From positions 1-64,000 of IMG/VR virus record IMGVR_UViG_3300032562_000004: a DNA stretch of 64,000 nt; one strand, 5' to 3'. Below the pieces are notes generated by a model that saw only the letters and a program-made list of their open reading frames with translations, had not been told where the DNA came from and searched no databases. The position numbers were made by a program, and so were the translations under genes. Each line of letters starts with the position of its first letter. Within the stretch, counting starts at the first letter, position 1. Positions 19,246-63,225 of this stretch are shown in pieces.

Positions 19246-19670
19246 TACGGTAATAGATTTGGAAAAGCCTCTTTTACGAATTTATAGTTTAAACCTTTTA
19301 CACCTTGGTCTTTTTGGAAAATACCAATCAATACTTCTGCATCACGGGGTTCCAAAGATTCCAAAATTTGTAACAATAATTGATTTCTTTTCTCTGGTGT
19401 CAAACTTTCTGCTGTAGCATCACCTTTTTTGAAAAGATATAATTTACGCAATTGTGCAGCTAAAGAATTTGAAGTAATACCAGGTAAAATATCATCAGGT
19501 ATTTTGTAATTATCTGGCATTCCAGTAACTAACCATTGGCAATTTGGATGAAATGTTAATTGCAACACATCGACCAAAGTTTGAGAAAGATTCTTCTCTA
19601 TTACTGCCATTTTTTCTTTTTTATCTTTAGCTTCTTCAAATTCATCAAATACTTCAAATATATTCTTCAT
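19245..19670 (-). CDS. conserved T4-like hypothetical protein
   Basis: KRNQLLLQILESLEPRDAEVL motif; usual neighbour of rnh. Confidence 0.75.
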   Translation of the reverse strand: MKNIFEVFDEFEEAKDKKEKMAVIEKNLSQTLVDVLQLTFHPNCQWLVTGMPDNYKIPDDILPGITSNSLAAQLRKLYLFKKGDATAESLTPEKRNQLLLQILESLEPRDAEVLIGIFQKDQGVKGLNYKFVKEAFPNLLP

Positions 19671-20512
19671 TAAAATTCCTCGATTATTTCCATTAAGTTT
19701 TTCAGTTTATGTTCAATAAAATAATTCAACAACTTATTCCGTTTTGCTGGAACTGTTTCATCATAAGTATTTATAATCTTTTCTTTTATTTCTTGTGGAA
19801 TGAAAGACAAGTCAATTAACGTTTGATTTCTACCAAAATTTACAGTTTCATCGTATGAGAAATTTTTAACATCTTCATTCAGATATTTTTCTAATGTTTT
19901 TTGTGTAATTGGTTTTTGTCTTAAATCACGGACAAAACAATCTGATGGTGAAAACATATTTGGTATGCCATCACCTTTATCACCACGAATAATTTTTTCT
20001 TTAAGTTCTAATACCGGATTTTCTGATTTTACAAACTTCTTTTGTGAAGGATTATATTGCTTCACATTTGGATAGTTTTGCAACTGTAGGAAGTCACCAT
20101 CACTCGATAGGATCAAAATCTTTTCGTGTGCTGAGTGCCGTGGTACTAGTGTGCCAATGATGTCATCCGCTTCGGCGCCCTCAACGTCAATTACTTTATA
20201 TGGGAAGTTTTCTTTGAGTTCGGCTTTGAATTTTGCAAGCATGTCAAAAATTAAATGCCAATCTAAGTTAGATTTGTCACGGTTCTTTTTACGATTTGCT
20301 TTGTAAAATGGGAAATACTCTTTACGCCAGTATTTACGATTATCACAACACAATACCACTTCACCATATTCATTTTTAAAATTCTTAATATGGTTACGAA
20401 TGATATTCAAAATCATGTGACGAATTAGACTTTCATCTAATGCACCTTTATGGTTTGAAATTTGTGCCATAAGTCCGGCAAGTAATACTTGATTTAAATC
20501 AACGAGAATCAT
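19670..20512 (-). CDS. rnh: RNase H / 5'-3' exonuclease (T4 Rnh)
   Basis: ILVDLNQ, YKANRKK, EADDIIG, SSDGDFLQL, GDKGDGIPN. Confidence 0.93.
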   Translation of the reverse strand: MILVDLNQVLLAGLMAQISNHKGALDESLIRHMILNIIRNHIKNFKNEYGEVVLCCDNRKYWRKEYFPFYKANRKKNRDKSNLDWHLIFDMLAKFKAELKENFPYKVIDVEGAEADDIIGTLVPRHSAHEKILILSSDGDFLQLQNYPNVKQYNPSQKKFVKSENPVLELKEKIIRGDKGDGIPNMFSPSDCFVRDLRQKPITQKTLEKYLNEDVKNFSYDETVNFGRNQTLIDLSFIPQEIKEKIINTYDETVPAKRNKLLNYFIEHKLKNLMEIIEEF

Positions 20513-20549: not shown

Positions 20550-20894
20550 TCACAGTTCTTTCAGTTTGTCAAATGTTTTTTGGATAAAAGTGGTAGAAGT
20601 GGTAGTTTTGCGAGCCATGACACCATACCAATTTTGTGGTATTAATCCAGAAATATATTCTAAAGGTTCTACAAAAACGGCATCAAAGCGGTCAACATCA
20701 TATATGCCATCATGTGTATTATCTTCTTTGAATAATATAACATGATATGTATTACCCATTGTAGAATTGTTTAGGCTTTCACCTGGATTTTTGTATAAAG
20801 CTGATTCAATATGTATTTCGTCTTTTTTATCGCCAGGTAGAAAAAAGATTGCGTCATGTGTCTCATTCTTGAGGTGTTTGAGAAATTCTAACAT
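20550..20894 (-). CDS. hypothetical protein
   Basis: 114-aa ORF. Confidence 0.7.
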   Translation of the reverse strand: MLEFLKHLKNETHDAIFFLPGDKKDEIHIESALYKNPGESLNNSTMGNTYHVILFKEDNTHDGIYDVDRFDAVFVEPLEYISGLIPQNWYGVMARKTTTSTTFIQKTFDKLKEL

Positions 20895-21303
20895 TATAGT
20901 CCTTGATATGTGATTTGCGTACTCTTACCATTATCCATGTGTTATAGTAATCTTCTGATTCCATAACTCCACGGACAAATTGCTCTTTTGCTTCGAGATA
21001 ACCACATTCGCCTTTACTTCGGCATAGATGTAATATTTCACGGGAAAAGTTTTCATGGCCTAATTGTAACACATCTCGCTTCAACATGTCACTGCTTCCA
21101 TAGTAAGTTTGCCAATCACTTGGAACTTTAATCTTTTTCTTTTTACCTTTGACTTGTTTGGTTTTGGCAGAATAAAAGAATTTCTTGCCTATGTATTTTT
21201 TACCATTCGTCAGATTAGTTATCTGATACACGAACCCGTAATTATCACCAATCAAATCTTCAGTAAAATCTTTACCATTATACTGCCAATCTATTCGTCC
21301 CAT
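20863..21303 (-). CDS. denA: GIY-YIG endonuclease II-like (DenA)
   Basis: YGFVYQITNLTNGKKYIGKK...YYGSS...REIL...YYN. Confidence 0.8.
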   Translation of the reverse strand: MGRIDWQYNGKDFTEDLIGDNYGFVYQITNLTNGKKYIGKKFFYSAKTKQVKGKKKKIKVPSDWQTYYGSSDMLKRDVLQLGHENFSREILHLCRSKGECGYLEAKEQFVRGVMESEDYYNTWIMVRVRKSHIKDYNVRISQTPQE

Positions 21304-21479
21304 TCCTCATTGTCCAAATCGTCATCATCCTCTATATAGTCCTCGGATAATTCTTCGATTTGTTCACCACAGAATGGGCAATGTTCAGGTAATTCTTGAG
21401 AAACCATTTCTTCCATAAATGCTATGCTATAAGTCGATTCACAACTTAAGCATTCTCCAGATAATTGTTTTTGAGTCAT
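21291..21479 (-). CDS. small zinc-ribbon protein
   Basis: CLSC...CPFCG with an acidic tail. Confidence 0.7.
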   Translation of the reverse strand: MTQKQLSGECLSCESTYSIAFMEEMVSQELPEHCPFCGEQIEELSEDYIEDDDDLDNEEWDE

Positions 21480-21488
21480 TAAAAATCC

Positions 21489-22475
21489 TTAATGTGCCCA
21501 AACATCACTCCAATCTCCAGACAAAGCACCTTTTGCATAGTCGGTTGCTCTATTCTCAAAGAAGTTTGTGTGAGTTGGTGCGTTAATCATTTCCTCTACC
21601 CAAGGTAAAGGATTTCTTTTCACTTTAAACAGACCTTTGAGTCCTAAAGAAATCAAACGGCGGTCGGCAATATAACGAATATACTTCTTAACATCTTCAG
21701 CAGATAAATCTTCCATGGCGCCCATCTTAAATGCCAAATCAATAAATTTATCTTCAAGTTCTACCATGCGTTCAGCAATAGTATATAACTTACCTTTCAA
21801 TTCATCGTTCCAAATTTCACGATTTTCTTCTATATATGTTCTAAACAGTTTAACCATGTTTTCTGTATGTTGAGTTTCATCAACAATAGACCAAGTTACA
21901 ATCTGTCCCATGCCTTTCATTTTGCCATGTCGTGGAAAATTAAGTAACATAATAAAAGAGCTAAACAACTGCATACCTTCGGTAAATGCCGAGAATACAG
22001 CAATGTGAGTTGCAGTGTTCTCTTTAGTAGTATTCTTTGCAGAGATGTCCATAACATAGTCGTGTTTCTCTTTCATTTCAGCATAAGCCATAAATTCGTT
22101 ATAAGTTGTATCTGGAAGACCGAGAGTTTCAATCAAATGTGAATAAGCAGCAATGTGTAAGGCTTCACGAGCAGCAAATCCTAATAACATCATGCGTATT
22201 TCGGGTTGTGGGAAATAAGGTAGATAATTATTAACATAACCACCAGCAACGTCAATATCTCCTTGGGTGAAGAATCTAAAAATGTGGGTGAGAAATTGCT
22301 TTTCTTCTTTGGTGAGTTTTTTCTTCCAATCTTTAACATCTTCCAACATTGGAACTTCGGTATGTAACCAATGAGATTGCTCATGCTTAAGCCATGCATC
22401 ATAAGCCCAAGCATAATTAAAAGGTTTAAAATATGTACGCTCATCGGTGAGCCTCGTTTCTGTTTTTTTAATCAT
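21489..22475 (-). CDS. nrdB: ribonucleotide reductase class Ia beta subunit
   Basis: FFTQGD, REALH, EGMQLFSSF, DETQH iron ligands; NFFE tail. Confidence 0.96.
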   Translation of the reverse strand: MIKKTETRLTDERTYFKPFNYAWAYDAWLKHEQSHWLHTEVPMLEDVKDWKKKLTKEEKQFLTHIFRFFTQGDIDVAGGYVNNYLPYFPQPEIRMMLLGFAAREALHIAAYSHLIETLGLPDTTYNEFMAYAEMKEKHDYVMDISAKNTTKENTATHIAVFSAFTEGMQLFSSFIMLLNFPRHGKMKGMGQIVTWSIVDETQHTENMVKLFRTYIEENREIWNDELKGKLYTIAERMVELEDKFIDLAFKMGAMEDLSAEDVKKYIRYIADRRLISLGLKGLFKVKRNPLPWVEEMINAPTHTNFFENRATDYAKGALSGDWSDVWAH

Positions 22476-22483
22476 TATTCTCT

Positions 22484-22807
22484 CTATACATTAAATGAGG
22501 AACCACAACCGCAGGTACCTTTGACTTCAGGATTTGTTATAACAAATTGTGAATTAAATTTTTCTTCTTTATAATCTAAAGTAGCTTCCATTAAGTATTG
22601 TGCCGACATTGAATCGACAAACACTTTAACATCATCCTTCATAATCACAAAATCATCTTCTTCTTGATTTTCATCGAAACTAAATTCATATTGGAATCCC
22701 GAACATCCGCCACCCTTTACGGACATCCTCAATGCCATATTAGGATTCTTTTCTTCCACAATCAAATCTTTTATTTTATTAAATGCATTATCGGTTACTT
22801 TAACCAT
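22484..22807 (-). CDS. erpA: A-type Fe-S carrier protein (ErpA/IscA)
   Basis: GGGCSGFQY and CGCGSSF motifs. Confidence 0.92.
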   Translation of the reverse strand: MVKVTDNAFNKIKDLIVEEKNPNMALRMSVKGGGCSGFQYEFSFDENQEEDDFVIMKDDVKVFVDSMSAQYLMEATLDYKEEKFNSQFVITNPEVKGTCGCGSSFNV

Positions 22808-22808
22808 T

Positions 22809-23195
22809 TTATACCTTACATGAACATTTAAGTTCGTAATCTTTTATTGCAGCTTTAATAGCATCTTCCGCAAGGATCGAACAATGAATCTTAACCGGCG
22901 GGAGTGCGAGTTCCTCTGCAATTTCAGCATTCTTAATTGATCCAGCTTGTTCCAGCGTTTTACCCTTGACCCACTCCGTGACGAGTGAACTTGAAGCAAT
23001 CGCCGACCCACAACCATATGTTTTAAATTTAGCATCTACAATTATTCCGTCTTCCACTTTAATTTGTAGTTTCATTACATCACCACACGCTGGTGCACCA
23101 ACCATTCCCGTTCCAACAGAATCGTCATTTGAATCCATTTTGCCTACGTTTCTAGGATTCTCATAGTGGTCAATTACTTTATCTGAATATGCCAT
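22809..23195 (-). CDS. iscU: Fe-S cluster scaffold protein IscU
   Basis: MAYSDKVIDHYENPRNVG, GAPACGD, KTYGCGSAIASSS, LPPVKIHCS. Confidence 0.96.
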   Translation of the reverse strand: MAYSDKVIDHYENPRNVGKMDSNDDSVGTGMVGAPACGDVMKLQIKVEDGIIVDAKFKTYGCGSAIASSSLVTEWVKGKTLEQAGSIKNAEIAEELALPPVKIHCSILAEDAIKAAIKDYELKCSCKV

Positions 23196-24986
23196 TTAAC
23201 CCTCACAAGCAATACAATCGTTACCTTGAGCAATCTGAGTCATATCTAGCTCTTTGATAACTTCTCTTTCTATCTTTTTGGCAACCTTATCAGCTTTACC
23301 AATTTTTTCTGAACGGCAATAATATAAAGTTTTCAATCCTTTTTTCCATGCCATAAAATGAATAGCGTGAATATATTTAATATGCGCATCGGGTCTAAAG
23401 AATAGATTTAATGATTGCGCTTGGTCAATATACGCTTGACGATCTGCAGCAAGGTCGATAACCCACCTTTGGTCAATTTCCATTGAGGTTTTGAAAATAT
23501 CACGTTCTGCTTCAGAGAGTATATCAAGATGCTGGCAGGAACCATCATTAGCAATAATAGAACTCCAAGCATCAGCGTAAGCTTGTTCATCTGTTATTTT
23601 CTCCTTTAAAATTTTATCTAACCATTTATTTTTATTTAAGTGAGAACCCGAAAGAGTATCCTGCCGATAAGCGTTGGCACGATAAGGTTCAATAGAAGGA
23701 GAAGTATTCCCCATGATAATGGAAGAAGAAGCATTGGGAGCAATAGCCATAAGGTGACTAAACCTACGACCAGTACCAGTTGCATCAGGAGCTTCACCTC
23801 TTTCGGAACCAAGTTGAATATTTGCTTCATCTAGTCCTCGTCTGATTGATTTAAAAATTCTGTTATTTGCAACTTTCGCCATAACACCCTCAAAAGCAAT
23901 TCCGTTGCGTTGTAAGTAAGCATGAAAACCAAGAGCACCAATACCAATGCTTCGTTCACGCTGAGCGGAGTACTTTGCTCTTGCAATAGCGTCAGGAGCA
24001 TTTTCAATAAAGTATTGGAGTACATTATCAAGCATTTCTGCTACATCTTTAAGAAACTGTTTATTATTTTTCCACTCATCATAAGTTTCTAGATTTAAAC
24101 TTGATAAACAACATACTGCTGTTCTTTCTTCGTTTGTAGGTAAAATAATTTCAGAACACAAATTTGATTGATGTACTTTTAGACCTTTATCTTTTAACCA
24201 TTTTGGTAATTGGCGATTGCTCGTATCAATATAATGAATGTATGGTTCACCTGTATGCATACGCAATTCTAAAATTTGTTGCCATAGGTGTCTTGCTGAT
24301 ACCATTTCACGAATTTCGCCTGAATGTGGGTCTTTTAGTTCCCAATCATCTTTAGCTTCAGGATCCAACATGCAATTTTCAATGAGTTGCATGAAGTCAT
24401 CCGTAATATTGATACCATGGTGTAGATTCAGGCAACGCACATTTGGATCGCCTGTTGGTTTTCTCATCTCAAGGAAGGGAATAATATCAGGATGAGATAT
24501 ATCAAGATAAGCAGCGTAACTGCCCCTACGGGTACGACCTTGACGATAAGCCAAGCTAGAGGCATCATAGATTTTGAGATGCGGCATAACGCCAGTCGAT
24601 TTATCGTCTGCCGAACGAATACCAAAGCCAATGCCAACACCGCCACCAAGCATACTAAGCCAATTAGTTTCTGAAAGATTATCAACTAGACCCTCCGCAG
24701 TATCTTCAATATAATTAAGGAAACATGATATAGGCATGCCACGCTTAGAACGGCCAAAACTGAGAATGGGAGTAGAATAAGATAACCAATGTTTACTGCT
24801 GTACTCATATAGTCTTTGTGCATGTTCTAAATTACTTCCAAATGATTTTGATACAAAGGCAAATCTGTGTTGTGGCGATGTTTCATCTTCTTTCATGTAC
24901 GATTCTTGTAATCGTTTTATTCCTAGTTCGTCAAAAAGTTTATCTCGTTGTAAATCAATAGTTAATCCTAGATATTGCATATTCAC
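23196..24986 (-). CDS. nrdA: ribonucleotide reductase class Ia alpha subunit (no ATP cone)
   Basis: PISC, SNLCSE, VCCLSS, APNASSS, DQAQS, LYY, C-terminal CIAC. Confidence 0.95.
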   Translation of the reverse strand: MNMQYLGLTIDLQRDKLFDELGIKRLQESYMKEDETSPQHRFAFVSKSFGSNLEHAQRLYEYSSKHWLSYSTPILSFGRSKRGMPISCFLNYIEDTAEGLVDNLSETNWLSMLGGGVGIGFGIRSADDKSTGVMPHLKIYDASSLAYRQGRTRRGSYAAYLDISHPDIIPFLEMRKPTGDPNVRCLNLHHGINITDDFMQLIENCMLDPEAKDDWELKDPHSGEIREMVSARHLWQQILELRMHTGEPYIHYIDTSNRQLPKWLKDKGLKVHQSNLCSEIILPTNEERTAVCCLSSLNLETYDEWKNNKQFLKDVAEMLDNVLQYFIENAPDAIARAKYSAQRERSIGIGALGFHAYLQRNGIAFEGVMAKVANNRIFKSIRRGLDEANIQLGSERGEAPDATGTGRRFSHLMAIAPNASSSIIMGNTSPSIEPYRANAYRQDTLSGSHLNKNKWLDKILKEKITDEQAYADAWSSIIANDGSCQHLDILSEAERDIFKTSMEIDQRWVIDLAADRQAYIDQAQSLNLFFRPDAHIKYIHAIHFMAWKKGLKTLYYCRSEKIGKADKVAKKIEREVIKELDMTQIAQGNDCIACEG

Positions 24987-25028: not shown

Positions 25029-26039
25029 CTAAACTTTTTTCCAGTTCACAAACTCCATTTTTGCTCTTAAATTTACAGCTGTATGTTTATCTATAATGTC
25101 TTGAATTTCGTCAGGTGAGAACCCATTCAATATCATATCATTAACATCTTTTTCTTCAATAAATTCTGGCCAAATAACCACATTAAAATGATTGTCTATC
25201 GCATGTTCCATCTTCTTAACAATTTCTTTGTTACGAGGCTCATTGTCGAACACCAACACCACCTTGGACTTGTCCAATACATCGGTGATTGATTCCAAAT
25301 TAGAGTCTGCTGTTGCTACTGCATTCTCAATGAACATGGAATCAATTGGACCTTCAAACACATATACTAATTTATCCTCGTCTATCCGGTCAAGCCCAAA
25401 AACTTTTTTATTATCTTCGTGTGTTTTTATCGTAATGTAACGGAGCGAGGATTCACCCAAAGCCCGTGCTTGAACGGCAACAAGGTTCTTTTGTTTATCA
25501 TAGAATGGTATAACGAGCCGTTTATCGTCCTTATGAAGTCCTTCTTTTTCAATCCCCAAATCTTCAACGAACTTCCTGAAATCTTCCGCATAGTATAATT
25601 GCGATGAAAAGGCCTCAGGAATCCGTCTCTGCTGAACATAGACCTTAGCAAAATGCGCTTCTGGTAAAGAGTCGATTGTTGGAAGTTCAAGGGATTTCTT
25701 GAAGGTCGGCTTCTCCGTTTTAAATTCTTCAAACTCCGGTTTCGGGTAGTTGCCATTGTCAGTTCCATTCTTATATCGTTCAAGTTGGTATTCCTGTACG
25801 AGATTGGGATCAACTTGTTTTAGGAAATTATAGAAAGTTGTGGATATGCCACAATTATGGCACATATAAAAGTAGTCATTCTTTTTACGAAAGATATAAC
25901 CACGAGATTTTACTTTATTCTTTTGGGAATCACCACAGATTGGACACCTGAAGTTATAGAGATCATCCTTCTTCTTGGCAAATCTCTGTAACTTTGGTGC
26001 CACTTGTAACAGGAAAGACCTGTCGATAAAAACGCTCAT
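25029..26039 (-). CDS. gp61: DNA primase (T4 gp61)
   Basis: RCPICGDS...CHNCG zinc finger; FEGPIDSMF; DNEPRN TOPRIM. Confidence 0.95.
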   Translation of the reverse strand: MSVFIDRSFLLQVAPKLQRFAKKKDDLYNFRCPICGDSQKNKVKSRGYIFRKKNDYFYMCHNCGISTTFYNFLKQVDPNLVQEYQLERYKNGTDNGNYPKPEFEEFKTEKPTFKKSLELPTIDSLPEAHFAKVYVQQRRIPEAFSSQLYYAEDFRKFVEDLGIEKEGLHKDDKRLVIPFYDKQKNLVAVQARALGESSLRYITIKTHEDNKKVFGLDRIDEDKLVYVFEGPIDSMFIENAVATADSNLESITDVLDKSKVVLVFDNEPRNKEIVKKMEHAIDNHFNVVIWPEFIEEKDVNDMILNGFSPDEIQDIIDKHTAVNLRAKMEFVNWKKV

Positions 26040-26660: not shown

Positions 26661-27149
26661 TTATCTTTCTGGCATTGACATAGAAGGACCTAGTGGTTTT
26701 AACGTAGGTGATGGGGTTGTGGTAACAGTTTCAGATACAGTTGTTGTAGTTGATTGTGGCATTGGTGCTCTAGACATTGTATTTCCACCCAATGGCATAT
26801 TATTCATTGGCATTGGAGAACCACCCATCATAGGTGTATGTAATCCACCGGCCTCAGCACCATTTAATTTCTCTTGTGTTCTACCATAAGCAGCAATACC
26901 AAGAACAGCACCCATGGCAAGGTGAAATAATCCGGCACCTTGAAGTGTTAAAGGTTGCCATTGACTAGTTACTTGGCCATGGTTAAGTGCCTGAAGTAAA
27001 CTCCAAAGGACAGGTGCTAATAAGAAGTCGAACATACAAATACTCATGTACATCCAACCCATCATTGGACGCCACTTGGAGTTCATCCAATCTTCTTTTT
27101 TCTTCTCGCTGTCTGAGAGTTGTTTGTATTCTTTTTGTGTATCTGGCAT
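26661..27149 (-). CDS. holin (GTA-type 3TM family)
   Basis: WMNSKWRPMMGWMY...FDF...GAVLGIAAYGRTQEK; adjacent to endolysin. Confidence 0.75.
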   Translation of the reverse strand: MPDTQKEYKQLSDSEKKKEDWMNSKWRPMMGWMYMSICMFDFLLAPVLWSLLQALNHGQVTSQWQPLTLQGAGLFHLAMGAVLGIAAYGRTQEKLNGAEAGGLHTPMMGGSPMPMNNMPLGGNTMSRAPMPQSTTTTVSETVTTTPSPTLKPLGPSMSMPER

Positions 27150-27757
27150 TAGGCACCTAAAACTTGGCAAGCATGTTGATAATGTGCTCTGCGTTCTGGC
27201 TCACCTAAAGAACCTCCATTGATAATGTGTGAAATTTGGTCAATATCACCATTGTCAGCGTGGGCATTTAAATTGGCATTTTCCCAAAAATAACAAGCAG
27301 ATTGTACGGCACCATCAAAAGTTGCCATATAAGCAGGAACATCTTCAACGTTCATCTGTAAAGAATCAGCAAACGCTTGATAATTATCTTTACCGGTCAA
27401 TTGAATTAATCCACGACCACAATATCTCCAACCATCACCACTTTCCTCATCACCGTTACCCATACGTCCAGCATAAGCACGATTGGCGATTGCTTCTGGA
27501 TTATGTTGATATTGTTCGGCAATTTCCATTGTTTGGAAGTGTGATGGCCAAGTTCTATGTAGAGATTCTGCTTTGTAATTTAGATTCTCTTGAATTGCAG
27601 TGAAATTAGCAGACTCAACGCAACATTCACCCATGAAGGCAGCAACACGTAAAGGTGTGGTGATGTCATATTGTGGCAATATTTTATTTAATGCCTCAAC
27701 CCATTGTTCAGCATATGGGTTATTAGGTACAATTGCGTGAAATTCTTCTAAAGTCAT
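27149..27757 (-). CDS. endolysin, glycoside hydrolase family 19
   Basis: ES..F..IQENLNY; YCGRGLIQLTGKDNY; SACYFW; INGG. Confidence 0.92.
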   Translation of the reverse strand: MTLEEFHAIVPNNPYAEQWVEALNKILPQYDITTPLRVAAFMGECCVESANFTAIQENLNYKAESLHRTWPSHFQTMEIAEQYQHNPEAIANRAYAGRMGNGDEESGDGWRYCGRGLIQLTGKDNYQAFADSLQMNVEDVPAYMATFDGAVQSACYFWENANLNAHADNGDIDQISHIINGGSLGEPERRAHYQHACQVLGA

Positions 27758-62031: not shown

Positions 62032-62105
62032 TGGTTGCGGATCCTGGAGTTGCACCAAGAACTAAAGATTATGAGTCTTTTGTGATTCTATTTCACCAAT
62101 CCGCT
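62032..62105 (-). tRNA. tRNA with CAT anticodon, initiator-like acceptor stem
   Basis: cloverleaf; AAAGA-CTCATAA-TCTTT; 1:72 mismatch; ends CCGCAACCA. Confidence 0.8.
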
Positions 62106-62161
62106 GTTATATTTTACTAAATGGATTATGAAGTTAATCATAATACTATAAAGGACTTTAA

Positions 62162-62524
62162 ATGTTAAATTGTGTCATATGTTCAAATAAACTTAAAGGT
62201 AAACAAACAAAATTTTGTAGTTTGCCTTGTAAAAATACTTCTACAAACTTGAAAAATCAATCCTATACAAACCAAAGAGAAAGAGGATTAGATGTTAAAA
62301 CCAAATTAATTAAATTAAAAGGATCTTGTTGTTCAGTATGTGGTTACAATAAAAATTATGCTGGTCTTTGTTTCCATCACCTAAAAGATAAAAATTTTCA
62401 AATAGATATGAGAAGATGTTCCAATACAAAATGGGAAATTTTGGTCGAAGAAGTTGAAAAGTGTATGCTACTTTGTCACAACTGCCACATGGAAATTCAC
62501 TATCCTGTATATTCCATTATATAG
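62162..62524 (+). mobile_element. HNH homing endonuclease, antisense within the tRNA cluster
   Basis: CSVCGY...LCFHHL...CMLLCHNCHMEIH; N-terminal CxxC zinc finger. Confidence 0.85.
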
Positions 62525-62527
62525 ACA

Positions 62528-62722
62528 TTATTGAGAATACTGTTTCGTGTTTAAGATAATTCAACCGACCCTTTACAGGATTATTTCGGTATTATAGGTC
62601 TCTCCTGTGTTCGTCTTGCTGCGTCAGCATACAGCGTTCTCAGATACCTGAGGATTACTACCAGGATGATGTCCTTCCCTAACAGTTGGGATTGCTTACT
62701 CTTTTGCCCACATTCTCAATAA
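62528..62722 (-). ncRNA. ~195-nt structured ncRNA of unassigned family
   Basis: 11-bp closing stem TTATTGAGAAT/ATTCTCAATAA, five internal hairpins and a possible pseudoknot; starts immediately after the tRNA-Gly CCA. Confidence 0.7.
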
Positions 62723-62796
62723 TGGAGCGGGATATTGGAATTGAACCAATGACGAAAGGTTGGAAACCTTTAGTTTTACCACTAAACTAATCCCGC
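62723..62796 (-). tRNA. tRNA-Gly (TCC)
   Basis: canonical cloverleaf; AAAGG-TTTCCAA-CCTTT; encoded CCA. Confidence 0.92.
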
Positions 62797-62802
62797 AAAA
62801 AC

Positions 62803-62869
62803 TGGAGCGGTGGTCTGCTTTGCTCAGATAATCTAAGAGGGTATCTCAAATCGTGCTATCACACACCGC
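62803..62869 (-). ncRNA. tRNA-like RNA with Gly-type acceptor and non-canonical loops
   Basis: GCGGTG/CACCGC-T-CCA; T-loop AGCAAAG; short D arm; 67 nt. Confidence 0.6.
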
Positions 62870-62926
62870 ATATTCAATACTATAACATTACTTATACACA
62901 AAGTCAATAACTTTATGTGGTAAATT

Positions 62927-63011
62927 TGGTGCATCAGGAAAGATTCGAACTTTCGTAGCCAGAGGCGATTGATTTACAGTCAATTGGTTTTAACCACTCA
63001 CCCACCGATGC
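62927..63011 (-). tRNA. tRNA-Tyr (GTA)
   Basis: ATTGA-CTGTAAA-TCAAT; long variable arm; CCA. Confidence 0.92.
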
Positions 63012-63016
63012 ATTTT

Positions 63017-63092
63017 TGGCTCCCCGAGCTGGGCTCGAACCAGCGACCTACGGATTAACAGTCCGGCGCTCTACCAACTGAGCTATCAGGGA
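63017..63092 (-). tRNA. tRNA-Asn (GTT)
   Basis: canonical 76-nt cloverleaf; CCA. Confidence 0.95.
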
Positions 63093-63150
63093 ATAAAACA
63101 TTTATTATACTACACAAAAGAATTCCTGTCTAGTAACTTTTTGGTATACT

Positions 63151-63225
63151 TGGCATCCCGGTACGGATTCGAACCGCATCTTTTGGTTTTGGAGACCAAT
63201 GTGCTACCGTTAACACTACCGAGAA
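63151..63225 (-). tRNA. tRNA-Trp (CCA)
   Basis: TTGGT-CTCCAAA-ACCAA; G73; apparent U1:U72 mismatch; CCA end. Confidence 0.88.

What the first reader, a model, noticed from the sequence alone, without database searches (positions are those of the whole stretch)
21489..24986. IscU and ErpA inserted between nrdA and nrdB
Seen: nrdA, iscU, erpA and nrdB are separated by 0-8 nt, and both Fe-S proteins keep all conserved Cys. Known: class Ia NrdB needs a diferric-tyrosyl cofactor, and E. coli maintains it with the 2Fe-2S ferredoxin YfaE; IscU needs the host desulfurase IscS. Inference: the phage redirects host Fe/Fe-S flux to RNR metallation under iron limitation. A scaffold-plus-carrier pair inside the RNR operon is unusual.
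Basis: partly seen in the sequence, partly recalled or inferred. Interest (0 to 1): 0.6.

Follow-up and report, generated by a model that had tools for sequence, protein, structure and literature searches.

The report
Phage Fe-S genes within RNR operon
A large T4-like environmental phage carries a two-gene iron-sulfur-cluster helper cassette (scaffold IscU plus carrier ErpA) wedged exactly between the two subunit genes of its ribonucleotide reductase. Such helper genes are already known in aquatic phages, the spot is a swap-in/swap-out cargo slot, and a dedicated role in arming the reductase is possible but unproven.

Summary
On the minus strand lie nrdA (23196-24986), iscU (22809-23195), erpA (22484-22807) and nrdB (21489-22475), with gaps of 0, 1 and 8 nt. 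All cluster ligands are intact.

The window is the start of a 236-kb T4-like IMG/VR phage. It has no IscS, HscBA, ferredoxin, NrdI, Trx or Grx.

Phage IscU plus A-type-carrier genes are published auxiliary metabolic genes (PMC5332604, PMC9038755) and occur in at least 600 viral contigs.

The nrdA-nrdB junction is a hypervariable cargo slot. Of 67 related loci, 14 have no insert, including the closest relative. Nine hold iscU and/or erpA. The others hold thioredoxin, a GATase-like gene, a nuclease, a glycosyltransferase and more.

Linkage to class I RNR still recurs. The same genes, often with a SOD-like gene, lie in or beside the nrdA-nrdB junction of an unrelated E. coli-type class Ia RNR in ~350-kb phages. 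Bacterial iscU is never near nrd (0/80).

Best reading: a mobile Fe-S supply cassette that plugs into the host ISC machinery and is co-expressed with DNA-precursor genes. Its clients are unresolved; the phage's own radical-SAM enzymes are candidates. RNR-specific metallation remains a live minority hypothesis.

The RNR is ATP-cone-less, not E. coli-type class Ia, though NrdB has the Tyr/Asp signature.

The parts
23196..24986 (-). nrdA: class I ribonucleotide reductase alpha subunit, 596 aa, no ATP cone, C-terminal CIAC (CxxC) redox tail
   Evidence: Pfam Ribonuc_red_lgC/lgN only. NF006577 at 762.6 bits, above its cut-off. Best PDB matches are the class Id alpha subunits 6DQW and 6DQX. C-terminal tail read.
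22809..23195 (-). iscU: Fe-S cluster assembly scaffold, 128 aa, with an extra C-terminal Cys-x-Cys (C124, C126)
   Evidence: TIGR01999 at 219 bits, above its cut-off. About 80% identical to E. coli and H. influenzae IscU, with C37, D39, C62, H104, C105 and LPPVK kept. dN/dS 0.04-0.11. CxC tail described.
22484..22807 (-). erpA: A-type Fe-S carrier of the ErpA type, 107 aa
   Evidence: NF010147 at 149.8 bits, above its cut-off of 117. Best PDB match is H. influenzae HI1723. C35, C99 and C101 kept. dN/dS 0.03-0.12.
21489..22475 (-). nrdB: class I RNR radical-generating beta subunit, 328 aa. Ligands D73, E104, H107, E166, E200, H203; Tyr111 at the radical site; Y313 in the C-terminal tail; no cysteine
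   Evidence: PF00268, and NF007186 at 438 bits. Alignment to the Chlamydia R2 structures places Asp at the first-ligand position and Tyr at the radical position. Residue numbers.
22476..23195 (-). 720-bp iscU-erpA cassette: an exact insertion between the nrdA stop codon and the nrdB start codon, compared with cassette-free relatives
   Evidence: Junction comparison with L087, L093 and L094, where the nrdA stop is followed within 2-3 nt by the nrdB ATG. L092 has the same 720-bp insert.
25029..26039 (-). DNA primase gene immediately upstream of nrdA; marks the replication module
   Evidence: phrog_47 DNA primase, 1.3e-82. Weak Toprim match.
20863..21303 (-). SegE-like GIY-YIG homing endonuclease just downstream of nrdB; a possible driver of local gene conversion and mobility
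   Evidence: PF19835 SegE_GIY-YIG, 4.8e-41.
19670..20512 (-). T4-type RNase H / 5'-3' exonuclease; a module marker
   Evidence: PF02739 plus PF09293 (T4 RNase H C-terminal domain).

Best explanation
The region holds a compact, mobile two-gene auxiliary cassette: an IscU scaffold and an ErpA-type carrier. It sits in a hypervariable cargo slot between nrdA and nrdB of a T4-like phage.

The tight spacing (0-8 nt), the Shine-Dalgarno-like sequences and the absence of a convincing internal terminator suggest it is transcribed and translated with the RNR genes, as part of the replication and nucleotide module. Co-transcription is inferred, not shown.

The phage supplies only the two small components that are consumed stoichiometrically. 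Sulfur (IscS), the chaperones (HscA/HscB, which bind the retained LPPVK motif) and electrons (Fdx) must come from the host ISC system.

The net effect is more Fe-S assembly and delivery capacity in the infected cell at the time DNA precursors are made. The clients are not fixed by the data. The best candidates are the phage's own [4Fe-4S] enzymes (a radical-SAM/SPASM protein and a QueE-like protein) and host Fe-S enzymes. Help for the RNR is one possible benefit, not a demonstrated purpose.

Shown here: gene identity, intact ligands, purifying selection, dependence on host partners, and slot variability. Inferred: co-transcription, capacity boosting, and the client set.
For: Identity and intactness. 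Purifying selection. Phage-like GC.

No IscS, Hsc or Fdx in the phage, nor in any of 80 viral iscU loci. By contrast, 80/80 closest bacterial iscU sit in iscRSUA-hscBA-fdx operons.

An A-type carrier lies in 72 of 80 viral iscU loci, usually directly downstream.

Viral and bacterial IscU are separated on the tree: 7 label changes against about 53 in shuffles.

Slot variability: 14 of 67 loci have no insert. The rest carry thioredoxin (28), a GATase-like gene (20), SNase, GT2, a metallophosphatase, a desaturase, a SET-domain gene or a 2OG-Fe(II) oxygenase.

The closest relative L087 lacks the cassette, and cassette presence is incongruent with nrdA/nrdB divergence.

The phage encodes Fe-S clients: a 489-aa rSAM/SPASM protein and a 284-aa QueE-like protein.

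Radical-SAM genes are found in 7 of 9 iscU-bearing records against 1 of 5 iscU-free relatives (one-sided Fisher p=0.063). In L041 two radical-SAM genes lie directly after iscU.

Published work makes the same proposal for T4-like environmental genomes (PMC5332604).
Against: Linkage to class I RNR is far more frequent than a random position would give. iscU lies within 7 kb of nrdA in 11 of 16 records that hold both and in 6 of 7 further records. At least a dozen different local gene orders keep the linkage.

Only IscU, the A-type carrier and one unknown 214-aa family are cargo shared by the nrdA-nrdB slots of the two unrelated RNR lineages.

Some iscU-erpA phages have no radical-SAM gene at all: G009 (96% complete) and G011. 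Radical SAM therefore cannot be the universal client.

The phage's radical-SAM genes lie more than 120 kb from the cassette.
Confidence: 0.55

Rival explanations
1. RNR cofactor support module. IscU and ErpA, joined in other phages by IscA and a SOD-like protein, provision the phage NrdB with iron and/or the reducing electron needed to build or regenerate its di-metal-tyrosyl cofactor. They could act directly as Fe or [2Fe-2S] donors, or by maturing a host YfaE-type ferredoxin. In effect they replace the yfaE gene that follows nrdB in E. coli.
For: Recurrent and apparently convergent linkage.
- In the T4-like lineage the cassette is found between nrdA and nrdB, after nrdB, or before nrdA.
- In an unrelated E. 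coli-type class Ia RNR lineage of ~350-kb phages (NF006578 above its cut-off), the orders seen are erpA-iscU-iscA-SOD, SOD-iscU-iscA, erpA-iscU-iscA, or iscU alone between nrdA and nrdB. Others lie 1.5-6 kb downstream. In total 22 of 80 loci carry them.
- Bacterial iscU is never near nrd (0/80).

IscU and the carrier are among only three cargo families shared by both slots.

None of 23 phage records, nor the window genome, encodes a Fer2/YfaE-like ferredoxin.

NrdB has the Tyr/Asp signature of radical-storing Ia/Ib enzymes, and there is no NrdI.

In near-complete genomes, 4 of 7 have iscU within 7 kb of nrdA. The naive binomial p is 7e-4, not corrected for relatedness.

From my own knowledge, not tested here: YfaE maintains E. 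coli NrdB; SOD was part of the classical NrdB radical-reactivating system; yeast RNR cofactor assembly needs the Fe-S protein Dre2 and Grx3/4.
Against: The slot also carries many genes with no RNR connection.

The closest relative works without the cassette, and a complete relative (G024, 160.7 kb) has no iscU at all.

In five records iscU is 20-36 kb from nrdA, and in G044 it is 82 kb away.

NrdB has no cysteine, so it is not itself an Fe-S client.

No known case exists of IscU or ErpA metallating a di-iron carboxylate protein.

The metal used by this RNR clade is unknown. The complex prediction could not be run.
Confidence: 0.28
2. Regulatory or takeover decoy. Over-produced apo-IscU and apo-ErpA soak up nascent clusters. 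The host sensor IscR then stays in its apo form and the host isc operon is derepressed, or host Fe-S and iron pools are re-routed. The cassette would act through host regulation rather than by delivering clusters to particular clients.
For: Only the scaffold and the carrier are ever taken up by phages, never the catalytic partners. The closest bacterial loci all carry iscR directly upstream of iscSUA. The IscR feedback mechanism is established knowledge, not tested here.
Against: T4-like phages usually shut down host transcription, which would blunt such a circuit. Strict conservation of the ligands and of LPPVK, together with the low dN/dS, points to real scaffold and carrier chemistry rather than mere sequestration. 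There is no direct evidence.
Confidence: 0.07
3. Artefact: a bacterial iscU-erpA fragment mis-assembled into a phage contig, or a mis-binned cellular contig.
For: Some 'phage' database records with iscU are indeed bacterial. 'Acinetobacter phage MD-2021a' contigs carry a whole iscRSUA-hscBA-fdx operon.
Against: The same insertion, with the same tight junctions, occurs in many independent contigs. GC and GC3 match the phage, not the bacteria. The flanks are T4-like primase, RNR, SegE and RNase H genes. No bacterial isc neighbours are present. The record is rated 100% complete as a virus.
Confidence: 0.01

Closest known systems
Phage-encoded Fe-S assembly AMGs (IscU and A-type carriers) in marine and freshwater viral genomes: Nishimura et al. 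2017 (PMC5332604), HMO-2011-type phages (PMC9038755), OM43 phages (PMC10580990), lake viromes (PMC13760526)
   Same: The same two gene families, found in uncultured aquatic phages including T4-like genomes. IscU is of the gamma/beta-proteobacterial type. The genes co-occur with phage radical-SAM and Cas4-like genes, and relatives without them exist.
   Different: None of the papers I could search describes placement inside the RNR operon, recurrent linkage to class I RNR, the accompanying SOD-like gene, or the C-terminal Cys-x-Cys tail of the T4-like-lineage IscU.
Bacterial iscRSUA-hscBA-fdx operon (ISC system)
   Same: IscU is 81-85% identical to the IscU of Burkholderiales and Gammaproteobacteria. 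All ligands and the HscA-binding LPPVK motif are kept. ErpA scores above the ErpA equivalog cut-off.
   Different: The phage has only the scaffold and the carrier. No IscR, IscS, HscB, HscA or Fdx is present. In bacteria erpA is unlinked to iscU, and iscU is never beside nrd (0/80).
E. coli nrdAB-yfaE operon, in which a [2Fe-2S] ferredoxin maintains the diferric-tyrosyl cofactor (Wu et al. 2007, cited within PMC8463856)
   Same: A small Fe-S-related gene is embedded in a class I RNR operon. NrdB has a Tyr/Asp site and there is no NrdI.
   Different: No Fer2-type ferredoxin is found here or in 23 related phage records. IscU and ErpA are assembly and carrier proteins, not known electron donors to NrdB. 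The RNR is ATP-cone-less and fails the E. coli-type equivalogs.
Insertions between nrdA and nrdB in T4-type phages (mobE homing endonuclease in T4) and the 'plastic periphery' of T4-like genomes. From my own knowledge, not retrieved here.
   Same: The nrdA-nrdB junction acts as an insertion hot spot. HNH endonucleases occur in the equivalent slot of the class Ia phage lineage, and a SegE-like GIY-YIG gene lies just downstream of nrdB in the window.
   Different: Here the cargo is metabolic genes under purifying selection, not a selfish endonuclease.
Class Id RNR (NrdAi/NrdBi; Mn2(IV/III), superoxide-activated)
   Same: A minimal alpha subunit without an ATP cone. The best solved matches to NrdA are the class Id alpha subunits.
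   Different: NrdB has Asp, not Glu, at the first-ligand position next to the conserved Tyr. By the published rule this is the Ia/Ib signature. The best NrdB structure match, 9DWS, could not be traced in the papers searched.

Membership tests
IscU Fe-S scaffold (TIGR01999 / PF01592) | Whole-protein score above the curated cut-off | tested here: met
   TIGR01999 at 219.4 bits against 192.4. PF01592 at 180 bits.
IscU Fe-S scaffold (TIGR01999 / PF01592) | Three cluster-ligand Cys plus Asp39 and His105 (E. coli numbering), and the LPPVK HscA-binding motif | tested here: met
   C37, D39, C62, H104, C105 and LPPVK98-102 are present. Shown in the alignment to 1Q48 and 2L4X.
IscU Fe-S scaffold (TIGR01999 / PF01592) | Actually assembles [2Fe-2S] or [4Fe-4S] clusters with a cysteine desulfurase | not testable with these tools
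   Needs biochemistry. The phage encodes no desulfurase.
ErpA / A-type Fe-S carrier (NF010147, PF01521) | Score above the ErpA equivalog cut-off, and the three invariant Cys (C-x(n)-C-G-C) | tested here: met
   NF010147 at 149.8 against 117. The IscA and SufA equivalogs score below their cut-offs. C35, C99 and C101 are present.
Complete ISC system (iscRSUA-hscBA-fdx) | Presence of IscS desulfurase, HscA/HscB chaperones and Fdx | tested here: not met
   tblastn with isc operon proteins found nothing in the 236-kb genome. PF00266 and PF00111 gave no match, while the control genomes were positive.
E. coli-type class Ia RNR (NF006578 / NF006576) | N-terminal ATP cone in NrdA, and equivalog-level similarity | tested here: not met
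   No ATP-cone Pfam hit. NF006578 at 103 bits against 813, and NF006576 at 66 against 346.
Class Ia/Ib-type radical site in NrdB | Tyr at the radical position paired with Asp as the first metal ligand, plus the full E/H/E/E/H ligand set | tested here: met
   D73, E104, H107, Y111, E166, E200 and H203, read from the alignment to 1SYY and 2ANI. Rule taken from PMC8463856.
Class Ia/Ib-type radical site in NrdB | Identity of the metal (Fe2 or Mn2) and formation of a tyrosyl radical | not testable with these tools
   Requires metal analysis and EPR of the protein.
Class Ib RNR (NrdEF + NrdI) | NrdI flavodoxin encoded, and NrdE/NrdF equivalogs matched | tested here: not met
   PF07972 is absent from the genome. 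TIGR04170 and TIGR04171 score far below their cut-offs.
Class Id RNR (NrdAi/NrdBi) | Tyr/Glu pairing at the metal site | tested here: not met
   The first ligand is Asp73, not Glu. Rule.
Class Id RNR (NrdAi/NrdBi) | Minimal alpha subunit without an ATP cone | tested here: met
   596 aa with no ATP cone. The best PDB matches are 6DQW and 6DQX.
nrdAB-yfaE-type cofactor maintenance operon | A [2Fe-2S] ferredoxin (Fer2) gene in or near the RNR operon | tested here: not met
   No Fer2 match in the window genome or in 23 related phage records.
Published phage Fe-S AMG set (IscU plus A-type carrier in T4-like environmental genomes) | A viral genome encoding IscU and/or an A-type carrier without the rest of the pathway, usually alongside virus-encoded Fe-S enzymes | tested here: met
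   Description in PMC5332604.

The most novel reading that the evidence does not exclude
Aquatic phages have repeatedly and independently recruited Fe-S assembly proteins into class I RNR operons of two unrelated RNR lineages. The recruited genes are IscU, ErpA and/or IscA, often with a SOD-like protein. Together they would form a phage-encoded system that builds and maintains the NrdB cofactor by supplying iron or an electron, standing in for the YfaE ferredoxin that none of these phages carries. The lineage-specific C-terminal Cys-x-Cys tail on IscU would be part of that adaptation.
Probability: 0.25. Interest if true: 0.75.

Novelty: new member of a known kind. Interest (0 to 1): 0.45.

Why it matters
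How class I ribonucleotide reductases obtain and keep their metal-radical cofactor in vivo is only partly understood, and is known for only a few organisms. Phage genomes are compact, so they tend to keep together the genes that matter together.

If the recurrent iscU/carrier/SOD linkage to nrdAB is functional, it points to an unrecognised route by which Fe-S machinery feeds a di-metal enzyme. It would also offer a small, testable four-gene system.

If the linkage is not functional, the locus is still a clean example of a hypervariable cargo slot in which T4-like phages swap auxiliary genes. It would also show that phages boost host Fe-S capacity by adding only the stoichiometric scaffold and carrier. 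That matters for reading AMG catalogues from iron-poor waters.

Tried and rejected
1. PD-(D/E)XK (Cas4-like) nuclease as the Fe-S client. It follows the carrier in 34 viral loci, and a homologue exists in the window genome. The family lacks the conserved four-Cys cluster motif, so I rejected it.

2. Thioredoxin and the iscU/erpA cassette as mutually exclusive alternatives in the slot. Two loci carry both (Fisher p=0.29), so this is not supported.

3. Promoter and terminator scan of 19.5-27.5 kb. Counts were near the shuffle expectation and no convincing internal terminator was found. It was uninformative beyond not contradicting co-transcription.

There is no evidence either way.

I therefore obtained no expression or habitat data, and read laying was not used.

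6. Host assignment. The closest bacterial IscU are Burkholderiales and Gammaproteobacteria at only 81-85% identity, and the RNR resembles that of Pelagibacter podophages at about 65% nucleotide identity. The host remains unresolved.

7. Grouping iscU loci into independent genomic contexts by shared neighbours. Single linkage merged unrelated loci, so the count of independent events is by eye from the gene orders only.

8. PDB entry 9DWS, the best NrdB match at 342 bits, was not found in any searchable paper. It gives no metal information.

9. In the INPHARED phage records, real phage hits to IscU or ErpA are very few: C48C1 and two uncultured huge phages. Several hits are mislabelled bacterial contigs.

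10. The large protein searches (search for homologous proteins, the search of protein representatives) and the structure predictions were not run. Family assignment was unambiguous without them.

Full report
**What is there**

The window is the first 64 kb of a 235,812-bp IMG/VR virus record rated 100% complete, with 36% GC. Almost all of its genes are on the minus strand.

At the coordinates given lie four abutting minus-strand ORFs: 23196-24986, 22809-23195, 22484-22807 and 21489-22475. Pfam and NCBIfam identify them as follows:
- a class I RNR alpha subunit (NF006577, 763 bits, cut-off 620);
- IscU (TIGR01999, 219 against 192);
- ErpA (NF010147, 150 against 117);
- an RNR beta subunit (NF007186, 438 against 237).

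The gaps between them are 0, 1 and 8 nt. The nrdA stop codon TAA is followed directly by the iscU ATG.

IscU is about 80% identical to the solved E. coli and H. influenzae proteins. It keeps C37, D39, C62, H104, C105 and the HscA-binding LPPVK motif. ErpA keeps its three cysteines.

The neighbours are a DNA primase upstream. Downstream lie a small zinc-ribbon ORF, a SegE-like GIY-YIG endonuclease and a T4-type RNase H. This is the replication and nucleotide module of a T4-like phage.

**It is a real phage feature, not a chimera**

The GC and GC3 of iscU and erpA match the phage. The closest bacterial iscU genes have a median GC of 0.59. Against phage relatives, dN/dS is 0.03-0.12 with dS of 0.6-1.6. 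The same insertion with the same junctions is seen in independent contigs.

**What kind of RNR it is**

NrdA has no ATP cone. Its best solved relatives are the minimal class Id alpha subunits 6DQW and 6DQX. The E. coli-type class Ia equivalogs fail badly.

NrdB aligns best to the untraceable entry 9DWS, and next to the Chlamydia class Ic R2 structures. In that alignment the first metal ligand is Asp73 and the radical position is Tyr111.

The review PMC8463856 gives Tyr/Asp as the signature of Ia/Ib, Phe/Glu of Ic and Tyr/Glu of Id. The genome has no NrdI. A di-iron-tyrosyl cofactor is thus a reasonable inference, but the metal of this clade is not established.

NrdB contains no cysteine, so it cannot itself be a Cys-ligated Fe-S client. 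NrdA ends in a CIAC redox tail, yet the phage has no thioredoxin or glutaredoxin.

**What the phage does not have**

There is no cysteine desulfurase, HscA, HscB, ISC ferredoxin or any Fer2 protein. The pair must therefore plug into the host ISC machinery.

**How common the pair is in phages**

I examined the best 80 loci.
- None has IscS, IscR, HscA/B or Fdx.
- 72 have an A-type carrier, usually immediately downstream.

As a control, the 80 closest bacterial iscU (81-85% identity, Burkholderiales and Gammaproteobacteria) all sit in classical iscRSUA-hscBA-fdx operons, and none is within 4 kb of nrd genes.

On an IscU tree that is admittedly poorly resolved, the viral and bacterial labels cluster strongly: 7 changes against about 53 in shuffles.

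The literature already describes viral IscU and A-type-carrier AMGs, including T4-like genomes that also encode radical-SAM and Cas4-like proteins (PMC5332604; PMC9038755). The gene pair itself is therefore a known kind of phage AMG.

**Is the position conserved?**

I seeded a second scan with NrdB. The best 80 loci were 85-97% identical. Sixty-seven of them contain both the nrdA 3' end and nrdB.
- In 14, the two genes abut (18 nt or less).
- In 53, there is an insert of 141-3016 nt.

The inserts are thioredoxin (28 loci), a GATase-like gene (20), an unknown 214-aa gene (14), iscU and/or erpA (9, plus 2 truncated loci), SNase, a GT2 glycosyltransferase, a metallophosphatase, a fatty-acid desaturase, a SET-domain protein and a 2OG-Fe(II) oxygenase.

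The closest relative of the window's RNR genes is L087 (nrdA dS 0.24, nrdB dS 0.52). It has no cassette, and its nrdA stop is followed by nrdB after 2 nt. The cassette-bearing relatives are more distant, with dS of 0.8-1.9. A complete 160.7-kb relative, G024, has no iscU anywhere.

The junction is therefore a hypervariable cargo slot, and the 720-bp cassette is gained, lost or exchanged among close relatives. This weakens inference from position alone.

**But linkage to class I RNR recurs**

Within the T4-like lineage the pair also appears:
- directly after nrdB (L156, L007, L009, L012, L020);
- in reversed order (L027, L039, L165);
- as erpA alone (L103);
- 2.4 kb upstream of nrdA (L129).

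One iscU locus, L067, belongs to a different RNR altogether. It is an E. coli-type class Ia enzyme (NF006578, 830 bits, above its cut-off) that is about 21% identical to the window's proteins. Its gene order is nrdA-erpA-iscU-iscA-SOD-like-nrdB.

I seeded a third scan with that NrdB. Of the best 80 loci, 22 have iscU or a carrier in the locus. About 10 hold them between nrdA and nrdB, as erpA-iscU-iscA, SOD-iscU-iscA or iscU alone. Others hold them 1.5-6 kb downstream.

That slot is also variable. Thirty-three of 70 loci have no insert. The other cargos are a class II aldolase, a SOD-like gene, a 2OG-Fe(II) oxygenase, HNH endonucleases and an HD-domain gene. Only IscU, the carrier and one unknown family are shared between the two slots.

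A third configuration, iscU-iscA-exonuclease-x-x-nrdA, is conserved in another set of very large phages.

Across whole records that hold both genes, iscU is within 7 kb of nrdA in 11 of 16 and in 6 of 7 further records. It is 20-82 kb away in six. These records are related to one another, so the naive binomial (p about 7e-4 for near-complete genomes) overstates the significance. Even so, at least a dozen distinct local gene orders keep the proximity.

None of 23 such phage records encodes a YfaE-type ferredoxin.

**Alternative clients**

The window genome encodes a 489-aa radical-SAM/SPASM protein and a 284-aa QueE-like radical-SAM protein.

Radical-SAM genes occur in 7 of 9 iscU-bearing records, several of which have 8-13 copies. 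They occur in 1 of 5 iscU-free relatives (one-sided Fisher p=0.063). In L041 two radical-SAM genes lie directly after iscU.

However, two iscU-erpA phages have none. The PD-(D/E)XK nuclease that often follows the carrier lacks the Cas4 four-Cys motif, so it is not a client.

**Interpretation**

The best-supported reading (about 0.55) is a mobile Fe-S supply cassette that adds scaffold and carrier capacity to the host ISC pathway. It is expressed with the DNA-precursor genes, and its clients are not yet defined.

It is weakened by the slot's promiscuity, by cassette-free close relatives and by the unlinked cases.

**Verdict**

The gene pair is a new member of a known class of phage AMGs.

I did not find the following described in the papers searched: the recurrent association with class I RNR operons across two RNR lineages, and the lineage-specific Cys-x-Cys tail of IscU. 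They merit a focused experiment.

Noticed in passing
window 22809-22829 (3' end of iscU, minus strand); also loci L004-L007, L009, L011, L012, L015, L020, L027, L039, L056, L069, L073, L088-L092, L111, L112, L129, L156: The phage IscU ends in an extra Cys-x-Cys (…LKCSCKV). Similar tails (KCECI, KCACS, NCKCN, QCCQQN) occur in the T4-like-lineage IscUs. They are absent from 80/80 closest bacterial IscUs and from 18/18 IscUs next to the class Ia RNR of the ~350-kb phages. The tail co-occurs perfectly with an ErpA-only partner (14/14), whereas IscUs with an IscA-type partner lack it (0/38). This is a lineage split, not independent events. Its function is unknown.
   Followed up: partly
L067:4105-4656 (= L247); also L252, L263, L265, L286, L287, L296, L315, and 9 of the 80 iscU-centred loci: A divergent Fe/Mn superoxide-dismutase-like gene (183 aa; SOD[Fe] model at 91 bits, below its cut-off) repeatedly sits beside iscU/iscA and/or between nrdA and nrdB in phages with class Ia RNR. 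This could protect Fe-S clusters or the NrdB radical.
   Followed up: partly
window 20863-21303 and 21291-21479 (minus strand): A SegE-like GIY-YIG homing endonuclease and an overlapping 62-aa zinc-ribbon / Lar-like ORF lie immediately downstream of nrdB. HNH endonucleases occupy the equivalent nrdA-nrdB slot in other phages. They may drive the local gene shuffling.
   Followed up: no
G000:C1:148531-150000 and 181892-182746 (outside the window): The same phage encodes a 489-aa radical-SAM/SPASM-type protein (a peptide-maturase-like enzyme with a CxxxCxxC motif) and a 284-aa QueE-like radical-SAM protein. Both are likely [4Fe-4S] clients.
   Followed up: partly
record behind L024 (G003, about 62-84 kb), and records behind L041 (G006) and L305 (G044): Some iscU-bearing large phages carry 8-13 radical-SAM genes. 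In G003 they form one dense cluster of about 20 kb. In L041 two of them lie directly after iscU, where the carrier usually sits.
   Followed up: no
L002 (CAKLQF020000009.1) and CAKLQH020000011.1 in the phage collection: Records labelled 'Acinetobacter phage MD-2021a' carry a complete bacterial iscRSUA-hscBA-fdx operon with ppiD, hupB and mfd. They look like cellular contigs mislabelled as phage.
   Followed up: partly
window 62032-63224 (minus strand): A cluster of five tRNA genes: Met, Gly, Tyr, Asn and Trp.
   Followed up: no
window 26661-27757 (minus strand): A holin-like gene and an endolysin gene sit inside the replication module, about 1.7 kb (1.7-2.8 kb) upstream of nrdA, an unusual place for lysis genes in a T4-like layout.
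   Followed up: no
loci L101, L104, L107-L109, L113 and others (28 of 67): The commonest cargo in the nrdA-nrdB slot of related phages is an 81-aa thioredoxin, the natural RNR reductant. The window phage has no Trx or Grx at all, although its NrdA keeps the CxxC tail.
   Followed up: partly
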